Source: Octopus vulgaris (Eukaryota). From it: DNA of 64,000 bases. The position numbers were made by a program, and so were the translations under genes. The notes under the pieces are model-generated. The model was not told the DNA's origin. It worked only from the letters and a program-made list of their open reading frames with translations, and did no database searches. The stretch spans positions 96,410,001 to 96,474,000 of the forward strand of contig OX597814.1 of the NCBI GenBank assembly GCA_951406725.2, given 5' to 3'. Positions 33,516-42,028 of this stretch are shown piece after piece (the first letter of the stretch is position 1; every line of letters starts with the position of its first letter).

Positions 33516-34150
33516 TTCAGATGTTTGTCAATGGGTATTTTCTGGTACAGGGATCTTGTATCTGTTCACAATGGACCGTCATTCTGTGTATCATAGTTAA
33601 TTCTGATTAAACCATGATGTCTTCATTACACGCATTGCATTTGATAACATAAATCAGAATTTTTGATGCACAAATAAAGTTATATATAGTAAATGTATGA
33701 CCTTCATATGCCGAGCTCTCTATGAGGTTGATGCAGATTCTTCTATTAGAGCGGTTCCATTGGGGCTGTATTTTTGGTGTGTTATTTCATATTGGTAATT
33801 TTAAAAAAGACTTTGGTTGCTTTTTATACTTTTACTATTTGAGTGTGTGTGTATGAGTGTGTGTTTCGAGTGCCCTTTTTCATTTGTGAGCCGTTCATCA
33901 AACTAGGAATGTTCTGATGCCTGTTGCATGATTCAATGTTTTTTAGATTGTGTGTTGATATGTGAAATAAACTATTCAATGTATCAGGTTGTTAATTTCT
34001 TTTCGTAATTCTTGAATTTCTATTGTTTCTGCATATTCTACTCCGTTATTGCTTAAAATAACTGGATATTGTCTCTCGAATAAAATACTTTAAAATGTTT
34101 ATAGTCATTTCTTCCGGGTTTTTGGATGGGATACAATTGTACAGATTCTG
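33516..34150 (-). mobile_element. Penelope-like element remnant (RT thumb to GIY-YIG endonuclease), interrupted by the MITE
   Basis: LKYFIRETISSYLSNNGVEYAETIEIQELRK and KILIYVIKCNACNED..MIHRMTVHCEQIQDP. Confidence 0.65.
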
Positions 34151-37469: not shown

Positions 37470-37623
37470 CATACATACATACATACATACATACATACAT
37501 ACATACATACATACATACGAGTTTATGTCACCGTAAGTTGGCGGTTCGGCAAAAGAAACCGATAGAATAAGTAGGCTTACGAAGAATAGATCCTGAGGTC
37601 GATTTTCTCGGTAGGTTTCCATA

Positions 37624-37830
37624 TATTATATCATACCTTGATACTGTCTGGACTGGGTTCTTCGTTGTTAGGACTCTGATAAAGAGTTAAACACTATTGT
37701 TTGCAACTGTAGCTACTAGATTTCAAGTTTATATAAACTAACTGGTTTCTTCTTTCTCCAGAGTTAGTCAAGTGATGAGACCACTTTAAGGGTCGAAACT
37801 GGATTAATGCTGTTCATCTTTTTTGTAGAA
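37624..37830 (+). repeat. Diverged relative of the 305-bp hammerhead repeat
   Basis: Shares TATTATATCATACCTTGATACTGT.TGGACT with 39527-39557; carries GTGATGA-GACC..GGTC-GAAA at 37772-37798. Confidence 0.7.
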
Positions 37831-37879
37831 AAATAGGTAATTTGTCGTGTGTGCATGTCGAGTGCGTAGGTTTGTGTGT

Positions 37880-37934
<55 letters not shown>

Positions 37935-37936
37935 CT

Positions 37937-38101
37937 CAGGCGTGGCTGTTAGGTAAGAAGCTTGCTTCACAACCATATGGTTCCGGGTTCAGTCCCACGG
38001 CGTTGCACCCTAGGCAAGTGTCTTTTACTATAGTCACAGGCCGACCAAAACCTTGTGAGTGAACTTAGCAGACGAAAACTGAAAGGAGCCCGTCGCATAT
38101 A

Positions 38102-38160
<59 letters not shown>

Positions 38161-38455
38161 ATGCGTGTGTGTGTGTGTGAGTATCCGTGTGTCCGTGTTT
38201 GCGTGTGTGTGTGTCCGTGTGTCCGTGTTTGCGTGTGTGTGTGTGCATGCCTTTATGTCTGTGTTTGTCCCCAACTAGTGCTTGACAATCGGTGTTGGTG
38301 TGTTTACGTCTCCCTAAAGTTGGCGGTTCGGCAAAAGAACCCGATAGAATAGTACCAGCCTTAACAAACAATAAGTACTGGCTGTCAATTCAATCGACTA
38401 AAAATTCTTCAAGGTGTTGCCCCAGTAATGACTGAAACAAGTAAAAGATAAAAGA
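37937..38455 (+). mobile_element. tRNA-derived SINE, family D, with an internal microsatellite
   Basis: GGCGTGGCTG..GGTAAGAAGCTTGCTTC..GGGTTCAGTCCCA; 3' part GGCGGTTCGGCAAAAGA; other copies at 37515-37612, 42420-42660, 44495-44720, 44755-44900, 48035-48175, 50800-51200 and 51415-51565. Confidence 0.8.
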
Positions 38456-38459
38456 TATA

Positions 38460-38636
<177 letters not shown>

Positions 38637-39091
38637 AGATCAGGTTTACATATTATTTATTTCTGCTATATTTATAATTGCATTTATCTCAATAAATATA
38701 ATTATTTATATTTCACTGTATATCTAATAATTTTTTTATATGAACTTAGGTTACATTAATTCAATGCAGTATTAAAAAATAAAAGTTCGTTGCTTCTGGG
38801 ATAAAATAAATCAGAAACTTGTGTGCCAAATTTGCTGGAAAACCGAAAATATAAATAATCATGAAAATTTTTTGTATTTTTTTCTCATTGCAAATATCTA
38901 CTTCTCGTTAGCTTTTTAATGAGCTGAACTATGCGTTAAACATGTTAGCCTTCATATATCTAATATATTTAATTTATATTTAAAATAAATAGTAAAAGGA
39001 ACATGAACGCTTGAGATATACTTCACCTTCAAAATTATTGACAAATGTACTTCTAAAAAAGTCGATATATACGTAAATACATACATACATG

Positions 39092-39151
<60 letters not shown>

Positions 39152-39392
39152 GTTGTGATAATGAAGTCAAACCCAAATAGTGATATTTTGAAATTTAATA
39201 CGTATATATCAGGTTTGCGTAATGTATAATAGGAAATGCATCCATTATATAAACCTTCTTTAGTTAAAACATTTCAAAATATGAAGGAATTAATGGAAAT
39301 ATTTTGGAACTTATTGTTATAGCAGTAAGTCGGCTACTAAAGTTAGAAGGATGGACATGTATATAGAGCGGGAAAACATACATACATATGTC

Positions 39393-39462
39393 AAAATGAT
39401 GCGGACGTCTCTGATGAGAACCTAATAAGGTTCGAAAATCGATGAAGGTTGTTCATCCTTTT
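39393..39462 (+). ncRNA. Type I hammerhead motif, cleavage triplet mutated (UGA instead of UUA)
   Basis: CUGAUGA, stem II GAACC/GGUUC, GAAA, then AUCGAUGA; stem I AUGAUG..GACGUCU against AGGUUGUUCAUC. Confidence 0.6.
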
Positions 39463-39697
39463 TTACAGTCTGCGGAGAAATGGCTAAAATTTGCCCTGTT
39501 TGTAATTATACCATTTGTTACATACTTATTATATCATACCTTGATACTGTGTGGACTAAGATCCCCGTTGACAAGCCGCTGGTATTTATAGAGTGTTAAA
39601 CACTTTCGGTACGTAAATTAGGAACTCCTTCATAGAGTAACTGCTGCATTTGTTGAGTATAAAAACAGTTTGGCTGATTGTTTCTTTGGTGACTGTC

Positions 39698-39766
39698 AAA
39701 ATGATGTGACGCTTCTGATGAGAACACCATAGGGTTCGAAAATCAATTAAGGTCGTTCATCATTTT
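39698..39766 (+). ncRNA. Type I hammerhead ribozyme candidate, UUA cleavage site (cut after 39749)
   Basis: CUGAUGA 39715-21; stem II GAAC/GUUC; GAAA 39738-41; short stem III in AAUCAAUU; stem I CUU/AGG, GACG/CGUU and a perfect AAAAUGAUG/CAUCAUUUU. Confidence 0.75.
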
Positions 39767-39820
39767 CTTTTCAGTGTGCGGAGAAATGGCTAAAATTTGC
39801 CCTGTTTATCATTATACCAT

Positions 39821-39897
<77 letters not shown>

Positions 39898-40364
39898 TGA
39901 GTAGTTGAATGAATTATCTTATTAAGGATAATTCGAATTAACCGATACCTGGGTAGCAAATTCACATCAGAAAAAACACGGTTGAAGTTACGTGCCTAGG
40001 GCATAGATTACCACACACACAGGCACTCATTTAGAAAAGAAATTAACAAAATCCACCTTTCATATGACCTGCACCCTTGAACCTTTAGAACCTTCTAGAT
40101 TCTTCTACATTCAACCACTTTGACGTCACTCCTTATAAAGGAATATTTTAAAGAGACACTCATTATCGCTATGGGCTCCGTGTGAGCAATCATCTAAAAG
40201 TCTTTTGTGTATTTTGATGTTGACATAAGTTCCTTGCTTTTCCTGAAGAGAAAGCGGCATAATGTACTCCTTATTCCTTCGCAATTAGGAATATGCAGCC
40301 TTCGAAACATATGTCGAAAATAAAGGAATTTTGTTAATTCGTCGTTCAGCTCCACTCTTTCATA

Positions 40365-40401
<37 letters not shown>

Positions 40402-40473
40402 TCATTAGTTAATATAACCGATAAAGAAGTACATTCAAAAACATTAGAGCTAAGTACTTTATAGGTACAAAAC

Positions 40474-40878
40474 TAATGGTCACTCTGTCCTACGAAGAAA
40501 GGCTGAGGACGCTCGACCTTTATTCTCTTGAAAAACGCCGCCGCCGTGGTGATCTCATTCTCGCCCACAACATCATAAGCGGAAAGTGTAACCTCTCGAA
40601 AGAGCTGTTCTTCACTCCTGCTCCAGAGCGTCGGCTGCGGGGTCATTCCCAAAAGCTCTACCTGCGACGATTTCATCTCAATCGAAGGAGAGGAGCTTTC
40701 TCCGTCTGGGTTGCGGATCCGTGGAACAAGCTGCCAGACGAGATGGTGAAGATGCCGACGACCGCTTTGTTCAAAGCCTCCCTGGACCTCAAGTGGCCTG
40801 AACTCTTTACATGAACACCACCCTGTACTTAACTCCATGTCCCCCTACATGGCCTTGCTATTTGCTTTTGAGCCAAAT

Positions 40879-40926
<48 letters not shown>
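40474..40926 (+). mobile_element. CR1-type LINE 3' end with a (TAAC)n tail
   Basis: LSYEERLRTLDLYSLEKRRRRGDLI...LRGHSQKL...WNKLPDE; the ORF fragment is uninterrupted. Confidence 0.92.
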
Positions 40927-42028
40927 AATTTACCTTCTAAACGCTTACACACACACACACATACACACATATATATATTAAATTTCTGAGCTGAAAACAG
41001 AAATACACTGTAGGGTATAGTATATTGTATATATTTTGTTAAAACCTTTCACTCTTATTAAAGCAAAAATATTTTATGGAGCTCACTTCATATCAATTAC
41101 GGACTATAATAGAGGTTTTGATCCGTTCGCTTACATGCAGATATTGCTAAAAGACCAATATCTGTTGCTAAGGAAAATTATATGAAAATTACATAAAAAA
41201 AGAGCTCTGAAATTGCAATTAAATATAAATATTTCATGATATCGCGTCTTAGCAAAAGCCGGATATACCTACTGGCACAAGAAAGATGGTAATTAAATTG
41301 GAAAGAGTGCCAATGTAACCATATTGGCAGAGACATAGATGGTACATACACATACACATCCTGAAGACAGTTTCTCAAAATAAATAGAGCTACAATAATT
41401 TTGTATATGTCTTTCCAGGCATCAATACTTACAATAAAAGATGTCAAATCACAAAGATATTCAAGATACATTAAGGACTATAAACACCAACTGTCTGATG
41501 GAAGTACGTTTCAGTTTCAAAATATGAAATCATTTATCAGATGGAAGAAACACTTCAAATGTTTTTTTTTTAAATAATTAAAAGCATAAAAATAAATAAA
41601 ACCTGAGAAATATCCCTAATATGTAGCCAAGCAATAGATAATCCCAATTATTGTGTATGCATTATGTTTAACAAAGATATTTCGATTTTGTTTTACGATT
41701 TTTTTGTGTGTGTAATACTAATTTGTTTTAGATATATTTATAGTAGCTTTATTTCAAAGTCTGTCAAATCGTTACCAACTATCTATAGCAAACATATTCA
41801 CATTGCAATGCAGAAATGTGAGAGCTATTTTTACTTTTCATCAGCTTAAATAAGATATACCGTTGCCTTGCCAGCCGATGATGCTTAATACAAAATTACA
41901 ATCTAACAAATGTATTTTTCAAAAAATATGAAAGAACAACATGCATCACTTTTAACATTTTCCCAATAATCTCAGCGATTTGAATAATGGATGAGGGATT
42001 AGTATATCTTGCTTTAATGGATAAGACA

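What the first reader, a model, noticed from the sequence alone, without database searches (positions are those of the whole stretch)
39390..39821. Retrozyme-like tandem repeat with hammerheads spaced 304 nt apart
Each non-coding unit has CUGAUGA, stem II, GAAA and a long bulged stem I. The two stem III sequences (AAUCGAUG, AAUCAAUU) imply a palindromic consensus AAUCGAUU. That is the arrangement used for dimeric cleavage by newt satellite-2 and Penelope-type hammerheads. Cleavage of a tandem transcript would release a monomer of about 305 nt able to circularise, as for described metazoan retrozymes. Here copy 1 has lost its UH site. I know of no description of this family in octopus, but could not search.
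Basis: partly seen in the sequence, partly recalled or inferred. Interest (0 to 1): 0.8.

Follow-up and report, generated by a model that had tools for sequence, protein, structure and literature searches.

The report
Decayed hammerhead retrozyme-like repeat copy
This is an old, largely inactivated insertion of a short non-coding mobile element that carries a self-cutting hammerhead RNA motif. Elements of this kind are already known from mussels, corals and amphibians, so this is a new family of a known kind, and nothing points to a working gene at this locus.

Summary
Two hammerhead-like motifs lie 304 nt apart (CUGAUGA at 39411 and 39715) inside a direct repeat. A type-I hammerhead descriptor hits copy 2 only, and hit none of 300 shuffles of the window.

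The feature is not a tandem array. It is one 1.48-unit insertion (39389 to about 39827) of a dispersed family:
- The genome holds 1,046 hammerhead motifs within 3 mismatches of the consensus, against 0 in the reversed control.
- Copies share a fixed 3' end about 80 nt past the cleavage site, joined to (TA)n or (CA)n.
- 5' ends vary, and no copy exceeds about 2 units.
- Copies insert into microsatellites.

As a circle it folds much better than shuffles (z -3.7).

This architecture matches non-LTR retrozymes and non-autonomous derivatives of Penelope-like elements (PLEs). The window copy is about 8% diverged from the consensus. Copy 1 lacks U16.1 and copy 2 has a broken palindrome, so release of a monomer from this locus is unlikely.

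No autonomous partner with the same terminus was found, and no RNA evidence was available. The same hammerhead module also ends a 1.64-kb non-coding family and heads a SINE chimera family.

The parts
39371..39388 (.). 5' flank, a (CATA)/(TA)-type microsatellite remnant (aacatacatacata) that marks the target-site side
   Evidence: Across the family, 49% of 5' flanks carry a microsatellite against 14% of control windows.
39389..39445 (+). 5'-truncated upstream unit (family positions q248-304). It holds hammerhead copy 1: core 39411-39417, helix II 39418-39433, GAAA 39434-39437, helix III 39437-39444 reading AAUCGAUG. U16.1 is replaced by G at 39444, so this copy is disabled.
   Evidence: fails the descriptor.
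39446..39749 (+). One complete 304-nt unit in cleavage-to-cleavage register (q1-304). The whole window insertion is 7.9% different from the family consensus.
39690..39773 (+). Hammerhead copy 2 domain. Helix I 5' strand 39690-39714, CUGAUGA 39715-39721, helix II 39722-39737, GAAA 39738-39741, helix III 39741-39748 (AAUCAAUU, with the central G changed to A at 39745). The predicted cut is after A17 at 39749. Helix I 3' strand 39750-39773.
   Evidence: the only descriptor hit in the window, 0 of 300 shuffles. for the folds.
39750..39827 (+). 3' tail module (q1 to about q80) ending in ...TTATCATTATACCATTACATAT. This is the constant 3' terminus of the family.
   Evidence: 3' ends fall at q64-90 in 40 of the 41 copies examined (q45 in L062).
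39824..39893 (.). (AT)35 microsatellite joined to the 3' terminus. It is either the tail or the target.
   Evidence: 80% of family 3' junctions carry a microsatellite.

Best explanation
Window 39389 to about 39827 is an old, 5'-truncated, 1.48-unit insertion of a dispersed non-coding retroelement family. The 304-nt unit carries a type-I hammerhead ribozyme about 80 nt upstream of the element's 3' end. In kind it is a non-LTR retrozyme, that is, a non-autonomous element built and inserted in the manner of Penelope-like elements (PLEs).

Shown:
- The family consensus has a complete hammerhead core, a 5-bp helix II, a long bulged helix I, and a 2-bp helix III capped by the palindromic loop UCGA. 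Two hammerheads can pair through an 8-bp AAUCGAUU helix.
- Copies share one 3' terminus joined to (TA)n or (CA)n.
- 5' ends are variable and total length stays below about 2 units. Short copies are a single truncated unit. Long copies are a truncated unit followed by a full unit, which is the partial-tandem layout described for PLE insertions.
- Copies sit in microsatellites.
- Catalytic-core positions are substituted about 2.2 times less than the rest of the unit.

Inferred:
- Source copies were transcribed, and double-hammerhead cleavage gave 304-nt monomers that a cellular RNA ligase could circularise.
- A PLE reverse transcriptase/GIY-YIG endonuclease nicked a microsatellite. It primed on the TA-rich stretch at q75-90 and copied back through the intact or religated cleavage junction for up to about two unit lengths.

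Whether the template was a circle or an uncleaved linear RNA of about 560 nt is unresolved. The 2-unit ceiling fits a PLE-style single template jump or a linear transcript at least as well as free rolling-circle copying.

The window copy itself is decayed and most likely inert.
For: - Anatomy and chance test.
- Family size and dispersal: 2,028-2,698 first-look candidates. 87 exact and 1,046 motifs within 3 mismatches, against 0 in the reversed control.
- Consensus and palindrome.
- Fixed 3' end and variable 5' ends.
- No copy above about 2 units with a trimer query.
- Microsatellite flanks: 5' 49% and 3' 80% against 14% in controls.
- Circular monomer MFE -80.5 against -63.2 +/- 4.7 for shuffles, z -3.7, GC 38%.
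- Dimer helix III forms in the cofold.
- Core substitutions 24 observed against 54 expected, base-matched, p = 2e-6.
- The 1.64-kb family B carries the same hammerhead plus tail with a different helix I 5' strand that still pairs.
- PLEs are abundant and young in the same genome, and the one 3' end read (the 781-aa-family copy L037) also runs into (AT)n.
- One 775-aa-family PLE copy (98-100% identical over the 201-aa piece searched to >=150 other copies) lies in the tail microsatellite of retrozyme copy L005.
- Definitions come from PMC7229834, PMC4209133, PMC8557442 and bioRxiv 10.64898/2026.07.22.740005.
Against: - There is no RNA evidence of any kind, whether for cleavage, monomers or circles.
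- Rfam hammerhead models do not recognise the motif.
- Within the family there is almost no covariation: 5 double changes against 125 broken pairs in 1,191 cells. The structure therefore rests on the consensus, the core constraint and the family B comparison.
- No PLE with the same hammerhead or tail was found in 12 GIY-YIG loci or in the PLE pieces next to retrozyme copies.
- Described animal retrozymes usually form multi-copy tandem arrays. This family never exceeds about 2 units.
- The family looks extinct. Mean divergence is 8.5%. Of 30 multi-unit copies, 18 keep no descriptor-passing hammerhead and only 1 keeps two.
Confidence: 0.7

Rival explanations
1. The family is a SINE-like element that moves as linear RNA. 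The copied template is an uncleaved linear transcript of about 560 nt (start near q135, end near q85). The hammerhead fold serves mainly as the 3' recognition or priming module for the reverse transcriptase, or as a trimming device. It is not the maker of circular intermediates.
For: - There is a ceiling at 1.84-2.0 units.
- 5' ends cluster at q117-152 both in copies below one unit and in 1.8-unit copies.
- Every copy contains the uncut q304|q1 junction.
- The module shared by families A and B begins exactly at the hammerhead (q264) and runs to the tail.
Against: - The catalytic core specifically is under constraint, not the helices.
- The palindromic helix III is a hallmark of dimer-cleaving metazoan hammerheads (PMC4209133).
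- The monomer folds as a stable rod when circular.
- The 5'-end cluster coincides with the most GC-rich segment of the unit (q105-140), so it could equally be a reverse-transcriptase pause.
Confidence: 0.3
2. The unit is merely the terminus (pseudo-LTR) of a coding Penelope-like element, and the window holds a solo or truncated terminus of it.
For: - PLEs carry hammerheads near their 3' ends and insert as partial tandems into microsatellites (PMC8557442, PMC4209133).
- Vertebrate retrozymes are related to PLE termini (bioRxiv 10.64898/2026.07.22.740005).
- The same terminal module sits on a longer 1.64-kb element.
Against: - None of 50 family loci has RT or EN coding sequence contiguous upstream of the hammerhead.
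- Family B has no conserved ORF and no similarity to the PLE loci.
- Twelve GIY-YIG loci show no similarity to the unit.
- The 304-nt unit has its own 220-nt body, present in all long copies.
Confidence: 0.1
3. The feature is a satellite DNA of the newt satellite-2 type, meaning a locally amplified tandem array.
For: Hammerheads at unit spacing, and a dimer-type helix III.
Against: - Copies are dispersed over at least 30 contigs.
- Nothing exceeds about 2 units among the 40 best of 2,698 candidates for a trimer query.
- Tandem Repeats Finder finds nothing at period 304 here.
Confidence: 0.03

Closest known systems
Metazoan non-LTR retrozymes (Cervera & de la Pena 2020, PMC7229834), for example the Mytilus galloprovincialis 350-390-nt repeats
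   Same: Type-I hammerhead, a non-coding unit within 170-400 nt, GC below 50%, no LTR, PBS or PPT, a highly self-paired predicted circle, thousands of genomic motifs, and co-existence with PLEs in a mollusc-type genome.
   Different: There are no multi-copy arrays, since this family stays at or below about 2 units. It has a sharply defined 3' terminus 80 nt past the cleavage site and a microsatellite tail. No expression or circularity data exist. The family appears extinct.
Hammerheads in the terminal repeats of Penelope-like elements (Cervera & de la Pena 2014, PMC4209133; Craig et al. 2021, PMC8557442)
   Same: The hammerhead lies near the 3' end. Insertions are a 5'-truncated copy plus a full copy in tandem. 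Microsatellite targets are preferred. Helix III is short and palindromic, implying action as a dimer.
   Different: There is no RT/GIY-YIG ORF and no detectable similarity to the PLE copies sampled here. Helix I is long (4+7+5 bp) and helix II is 5 bp, rather than the short helix I and long helix II of minimal PLE hammerheads.
Newt satellite 2 and axolotl retrozymes
   Same: Helix III is too short to work alone, and its palindromic sequence favours a double hammerhead.
   Different: Those form very large tandem arrays, and self-cleavage and circles have been demonstrated for them.
Schistosoma Sm-alpha SINE-like repeats with hammerheads (from my own knowledge and as cited in PMC4209133)
   Same: A hammerhead carried by a short dispersed non-autonomous retroelement. 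Here a hammerhead is additionally fused to a tRNA-like SINE (family C).
   Different: The window's own family has no tRNA-like part. The fusion to the SINE is a minority variant.
Plant LTR retrozymes (PMC4918200)
   Same: Two direct repeats, each with a hammerhead, flank a short unique segment. The element is non-coding and a circular RNA intermediate has been proposed.
   Different: Those have type-III hammerheads, true LTRs with PBS and PPT, 4-bp target-site duplications, and Gypsy-type mobilisation.

Membership tests
Hammerhead ribozyme, type I | Conserved core C3-U4-G5-A6-N7-G8-A9, G12-A13-A14, the A15.1-U16.1 pair, and a non-G at position 17 | tested here: met
   The family consensus and window copy 2 meet every position. 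Window copy 1 fails at U16.1 (G at 39444).
Hammerhead ribozyme, type I | Three helices around the core, with helix I open | tested here: met
   Helix I is 4+7+5 bp with internal loops. Helix II is 5 bp plus a 6-nt loop. Helix III is 2 bp plus the loop UCGA, or 8 bp as a dimer. 89.5% of cells are paired against 20-50% for slid partners, but that structure was derived from the consensus.
Hammerhead ribozyme, type I | Compensatory covariation supporting the helices | tested here: inconclusive
   Only 5 double changes against 125 broken pairs in 1,191 cells, so the copies are decaying neutrally. Indirect support comes from family B, which closes helix I with a different 5' strand.
Hammerhead ribozyme, type I | Match to the Rfam covariance models (for example RF00163) | tested here: not met
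   No hammerhead hit at the gathering score or at E<=10 on 39200-40000.
Hammerhead ribozyme, type I | Site-specific self-cleavage | not testable with these tools
   This needs in vitro transcription.
Non-LTR retrozyme | Non-coding unit of about 150-450 nt with a type-I hammerhead, low GC, and no LTR, PBS or PPT | tested here: met
   304 nt and 38% GC. No ORF above 67 aa within the element (a 74-aa stop-to-stop frame at 39771-39995 runs on through the microsatellite into the flank), and no tRNA-like part.
Non-LTR retrozyme | Occurrence as tandem repeats in multiple copies, from dimers to many-mers | tested here: not met
   At most 1.84-2.0 units among the 40 best of 2,698 candidates. Most copies in the sample not chosen for length are below one unit.
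Non-LTR retrozyme | Stable, highly self-paired predicted circular monomer | tested here: met
   MFE -80.5 kcal/mol against -63.2 +/- 4.7 for shuffles, z -3.7.
Non-LTR retrozyme | Expressed as linear and circular monomer RNA | not testable with these tools
   No transcriptome data were available.
Non-autonomous derivative of a Penelope-like element | PLE-type insertion signature: fixed 3' end, 5' truncation, partial tandem of at most 2 copies, and microsatellite targets | tested here: met
   PLE features are as described in PMC8557442.
Non-autonomous derivative of a Penelope-like element | Sequence relationship to the terminus of a resident autonomous PLE | tested here: inconclusive
   No similarity to 12 GIY-YIG loci or to the PLE pieces near family copies. 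Only a small part of thousands of PLE copies, and of their 3' regions, could be read.
Autonomous Penelope-like element | ORF with RT and GIY-YIG endonuclease between the terminal repeats | tested here: not met
   No ORF in the unit. No RT or EN contiguous with the element in 50 loci.
tRNA-derived SINE | tRNA-like head with internal polymerase III boxes | tested here: not met
   ARAGORN finds nothing in 37500-41000, and Rfam finds no tRNA at the gathering score.
Satellite DNA | Long head-to-tail arrays | tested here: not met

The most novel reading that the evidence does not exclude
The roughly 85-nt hammerhead domain (q~240 to the T-run at q14-19) may be a free-standing, exchangeable cassette. 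It ends two different non-coding retroelement families, and it is fused to the exact 5' end of an abundant tRNA-like SINE in at least 40 copies.

If those fusions arose by the reverse transcriptase switching templates onto a small hammerhead RNA ending in oligo-U, as in the human U6-L1 chimeras, then a discrete hammerhead RNA was abundant in the germline. The hammerhead fold itself would then be what the microsatellite-targeting reverse transcriptase recognises.
Probability: 0.2. Interest if true: 0.65.

Novelty: new member of a known kind. Interest (0 to 1): 0.4.

Why it matters
Hammerhead-bearing retrozymes are the proposed ribozyme-based route to circular RNA in animals. They have been described in cnidarians, bivalves, amphibians and other groups. 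I found no description for cephalopods in the searchable literature.

This family adds a well-resolved case in which the insertion architecture can be read directly:
- the 3' end is fixed 80 nt past the cleavage site;
- no copy exceeds two units;
- the targets are microsatellites.

These features tie animal retrozymes mechanistically to PLE-style integration. They also show that the copied template always had an intact or religated cleavage site.

The finding also matters for repeat annotation. Such copies, and the hammerhead-SINE chimeras, would otherwise be labelled 'unclassified SINE' or 'unknown'. The locus in the window itself is of no functional consequence.

Tried and rejected
- Rfam at the gathering score and at E<=10 on the locus, and on 15 loci, gave only microsatellite-driven microRNA noise and no hammerhead.
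- Tandem Repeats Finder found no period-304 array.
- My first DNA pattern used the wrong loop length and found nothing. I corrected it.
- Covariation counting within the family was uninformative because the copies are neutral relics.
- I compared the two repeats within single elements, to test whether they were identical at insertion. There was only a slight excess of shared private variants (1.07% against 0.67%) and of identity (85.1% against 84.2%), which cannot discriminate between models.
- I tested for a 'master dimer' with repeat-specific differences. Only two weak positions differ, so I rejected it.
- I searched for the autonomous partner in three ways. These were GIY-YIG Pfam hits, blastn, tblastx and tblastn between families A/B and the PLE loci, and a relaxed hammerhead scan of PLE flanks. 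None gave a link.
- The PLE beside copy L005 is a much younger, independent insertion.
- A literature search for the motif and SINE strings found nothing.
- I did not test the organism's identity.

Full report
**1. The observation**

The region contains two copies of a hammerhead-like segment. CUGAUGA lies at 39411 and 39715, which is 304 nt apart. Each is followed by a helix II hairpin, GAAA, and AAUCGAUG-A (copy 1) or AAUCAAUU-A (copy 2). Sequences on both sides can close a long bulged helix I.

The repeat finder confirms the direct repeat at 83-85% identity. A type-I hammerhead descriptor I wrote hits the window once, at copy 2 with the cut after 39749. It hits none of 300 dinucleotide shuffles. 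Copy 1 fails because U16.1 is G at 39444.

Rfam's hammerhead models see nothing, even at E<=10. Tandem Repeats Finder reports no period-304 array. Only 1.48 units are present.

**2. What it belongs to**

The whole 438-nt structure, not just the unit, recurs across the 2.8-Gb genome at 82-88% identity on many contigs. There were 2,028 first-look candidates, of which 40 were scored.

The 304-nt consensus in cleavage-to-cleavage register has these features:
- CUGAUGA at q270-276.
- Helix II GAACC/GGUUC with loop CAAUAA.
- GAAA at q293-296.
- Helix III A-A/U-U capped by UCGA.
- A17 at q304.
- Helix I of 4+7+5 bp.

The 28 specified bases of this motif occur 87 times exactly and 1,046 times within 3 mismatches. 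The reversed control gives 0.

**3. Architecture of the insertions**

I mapped 30 high-scoring loci and 20 loci chosen only for an exact hammerhead onto a trimer of the consensus.
- Copies share one 3' terminus (3' ends at q64-90 in 40 of 41 copies examined, most at q75-88) reading ...TTTATAATTATACCATATGTTACA(TA)n. It is joined to (TA)n or (CA)n.
- 5' ends vary from q54 to q279.
- In the sample not selected for length, most copies are shorter than one unit and carry a single hammerhead.
- The longest copies reach 1.84 units.
- With a 912-nt trimer query, the 40 best of 2,698 candidates never exceed about 2.0 units. Long arrays therefore do not exist in the assembly.
- 5' ends pile up at q117-152, both in one-lap and in two-lap copies. 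This is next to the most GC-rich segment of the unit.
- Microsatellites flank 49% of 5' junctions and 80% of 3' junctions, against 14% of control windows.
- Many targets are the internal (TA)n of an abundant tRNA-like SINE.

Taken together, the signature is a fixed 3' end, 5' truncation, a truncated copy followed by a full copy, and a preference for microsatellites. This is the signature described for Penelope-like element (PLE) insertions (PMC8557442).

**4. Evidence on function at family level**

- The unit is non-coding and has no tRNA-like part.
- It is 38% GC.
- Folded as a circle it reaches -80.5 kcal/mol, against -63.2 +/- 4.7 for shuffles (z -3.7).
- In a homodimer cofold the two helix III palindromes form the 8-bp intermolecular helix of a double hammerhead. 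The isolated duplex is -6.1 kcal/mol.
- Copies differ from the consensus by 8.5% on average (range 6.0-11.8%), and the window copy by 7.9% (JC 0.083).
- Helices decay like the rest of the unit and show almost no compensatory change.
- The twelve non-CpG catalytic-core positions carry 24 substitutions where 54 are expected after matching for base (p = 2e-6). This suggests selection on the core in the lineages that propagated.
- Only 1 of 30 multi-unit copies keeps two descriptor-passing hammerheads, and 18 keep none. The family is essentially extinct.
- If the calibration published for Octopus vulgaris repeats applies (JC 0.09 is about 25 Myr, PMC13282606), the burst is a few tens of millions of years old. 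I did not verify the species.

**5. The window copy**

Copy 1 lacks U16.1. In copy 2 the central G of the palindrome is changed to A. Its self-duplex is lost (+1.6 kcal/mol), and the copy 1 x copy 2 duplex is only -1.5 kcal/mol.

Releasing a monomer needs two cuts. This locus can at best make one inefficient cut, after 39749.

The 5' flank is a (CATA)/(TA) remnant and the 3' side is (AT)35. No clean target-site duplication can be read. The sequence downstream (39894-40361) is another repeat.

**6. Related families sharing the hammerhead**

Family B:
- It is a 1.64-kb non-coding element with about 205 first-look candidates.
- It ends in the same roughly 130-nt module (q264-304 plus q1-88) and has no upstream hammerhead.
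- Its helix I 5' strand is unrelated in sequence (UGAAC...GCCU). It still pairs with the shared 3' strand.

Family C:
- It is an ~85-nt hammerhead-only module running from q~240 to the T-run at q14-19.
- It abuts the exact 5' end of the tRNA-like SINE.
- At least 40 copies span the junction.
- None of about 19 unselected SINE copies has it.

The module also occurs next to other sequences (L049, L050).

**7. PLEs in the same genome**

- GIY-YIG matches number 5,955 first-look candidates, with many intact 781-aa frames.
- A second family has 775-aa frames, 18,846 candidates and copies 98-99% identical. Some are head-to-tail at 4,271-nt spacing.
- A copy of the 781-aa family ends in (AT)n.
- A 775-aa-family copy lies in the tail microsatellite of retrozyme L005. 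It is far younger than that retrozyme, so it is an independent event.
- I found no sequence similarity between the retrozyme or family B and any PLE DNA that I could read.
- The autonomous partner is therefore not identified.

**8. Mechanism**

Shown: the insertion signature, the intact hammerhead consensus, its capacity to dimerise, and the constraint on the core.

Inferred: transcription of copies with two hammerheads, double-hammerhead cleavage to a 304-nt monomer, and ligation to a circle. Target-primed reverse transcription by a PLE enzyme at a microsatellite would then follow, primed on the TA-rich stretch at q75-90.

A firm deduction follows from the position of the 3' end. It lies about 80 nt beyond the cleavage site, so every copy was made from RNA in which that site was uncut or religated.

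The 2-unit ceiling argues against unrestricted rolling-circle copying. It fits either a PLE-style single template jump or second lap, or an uncleaved linear transcript of about 560 nt. I cannot decide between these without RNA data.

**9. Comparison and novelty**

The family meets the descriptive criteria of animal non-LTR retrozymes (PMC7229834), with two exceptions. It does not form multi-copy tandem arrays, and expression as circles could not be tested. Its helix III is the short palindromic type of metazoan type-I hammerheads that act as dimers (PMC4209133).

The recent proposal that animal retrozymes derive from PLE termini (bioRxiv 10.64898/2026.07.22.740005) agrees with the insertion signature found here. 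The sequence link itself was not found.

I found no mention of hammerheads or retrozymes in cephalopod repeat papers, and no paper containing these sequence strings.

Verdict: a new family of a known kind. The window holds one dead copy of it. The exchangeable hammerhead module and the hammerhead-SINE chimeras are the most interesting loose ends.

Noticed in passing
L044:480-2125 (also L046, L047, L051, L053, L063-L072): Family B is a 1.64-kb dispersed non-coding element with a defined 5' end. It ends in the same hammerhead plus an 80-nt tail and a (TA)n tail. It shares only about 130 nt with the window's family and closes helix I with a different 5' strand.
   Followed up: partly
L054:1970-2218 and L043:1978-2222: Family C is an ~85-nt hammerhead-only module ending at a T-run. 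It is fused to the exact 5' end of an abundant tRNA-like SINE. At least 40 genomic copies span the junction, yet none of about 19 unselected SINE copies has it. The cause could be a composite master or repeated template switching.
   Followed up: partly
G000 genome-wide, e.g. L037, L042, L005:258-1448(-), and C1:27841632/27845903/27850174: There are two very young PLE families with intact 781-aa and 775-aa frames. The second has 18,846 first-look candidates, copies 98-99% identical, and head-to-tail spacing of 4,271 nt. I found no canonical hammerhead in the 3' flanks I could read.
   Followed up: partly
window 33523-34143 (-): A degenerate PLE coding fragment, 32-36% identical to the young families, lies about 5 kb upstream of the finding.
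   Followed up: no
window 37932-38095 (+): This is a copy of the tRNA-like SINE, preceded by (AC)n. The SINE family carries an internal (TA)n that is a frequent target of the retrozyme family. The SINE's own 5' ends also abut microsatellites.
   Followed up: partly
window 39894-40361: The sequence just downstream of the (AT)35 tail is itself a repeat, with matches in L053, L038 and L016. I did not identify it.
   Followed up: no
family consensus q288-296 and q14-19 (window 39733-39741 and 39763-39766): The helix II 3' strand plus GAAA reads GGTTCGAAA, which resembles a polymerase III B box. In the consensus a TTTTTT run follows helix I. The hammerhead-only modules end at that run.
   Followed up: no
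G000:C20:40843341-40843973: This is the single longest copy found. It spans 2.0 units (q84 to q82 two units later) at 82% identity. It could be two full copies or two adjacent insertions.
   Followed up: no
window 39200-40000 and L056, L061: Rfam release 15 hammerhead models miss this family at E<=10 at the window locus. For the near-consensus copies L056 and L061 no hammerhead appeared among the 150 matches shown (66 lower-scoring ones were not displayed). Microsatellites there produce many spurious microRNA-family matches.
   Followed up: yes
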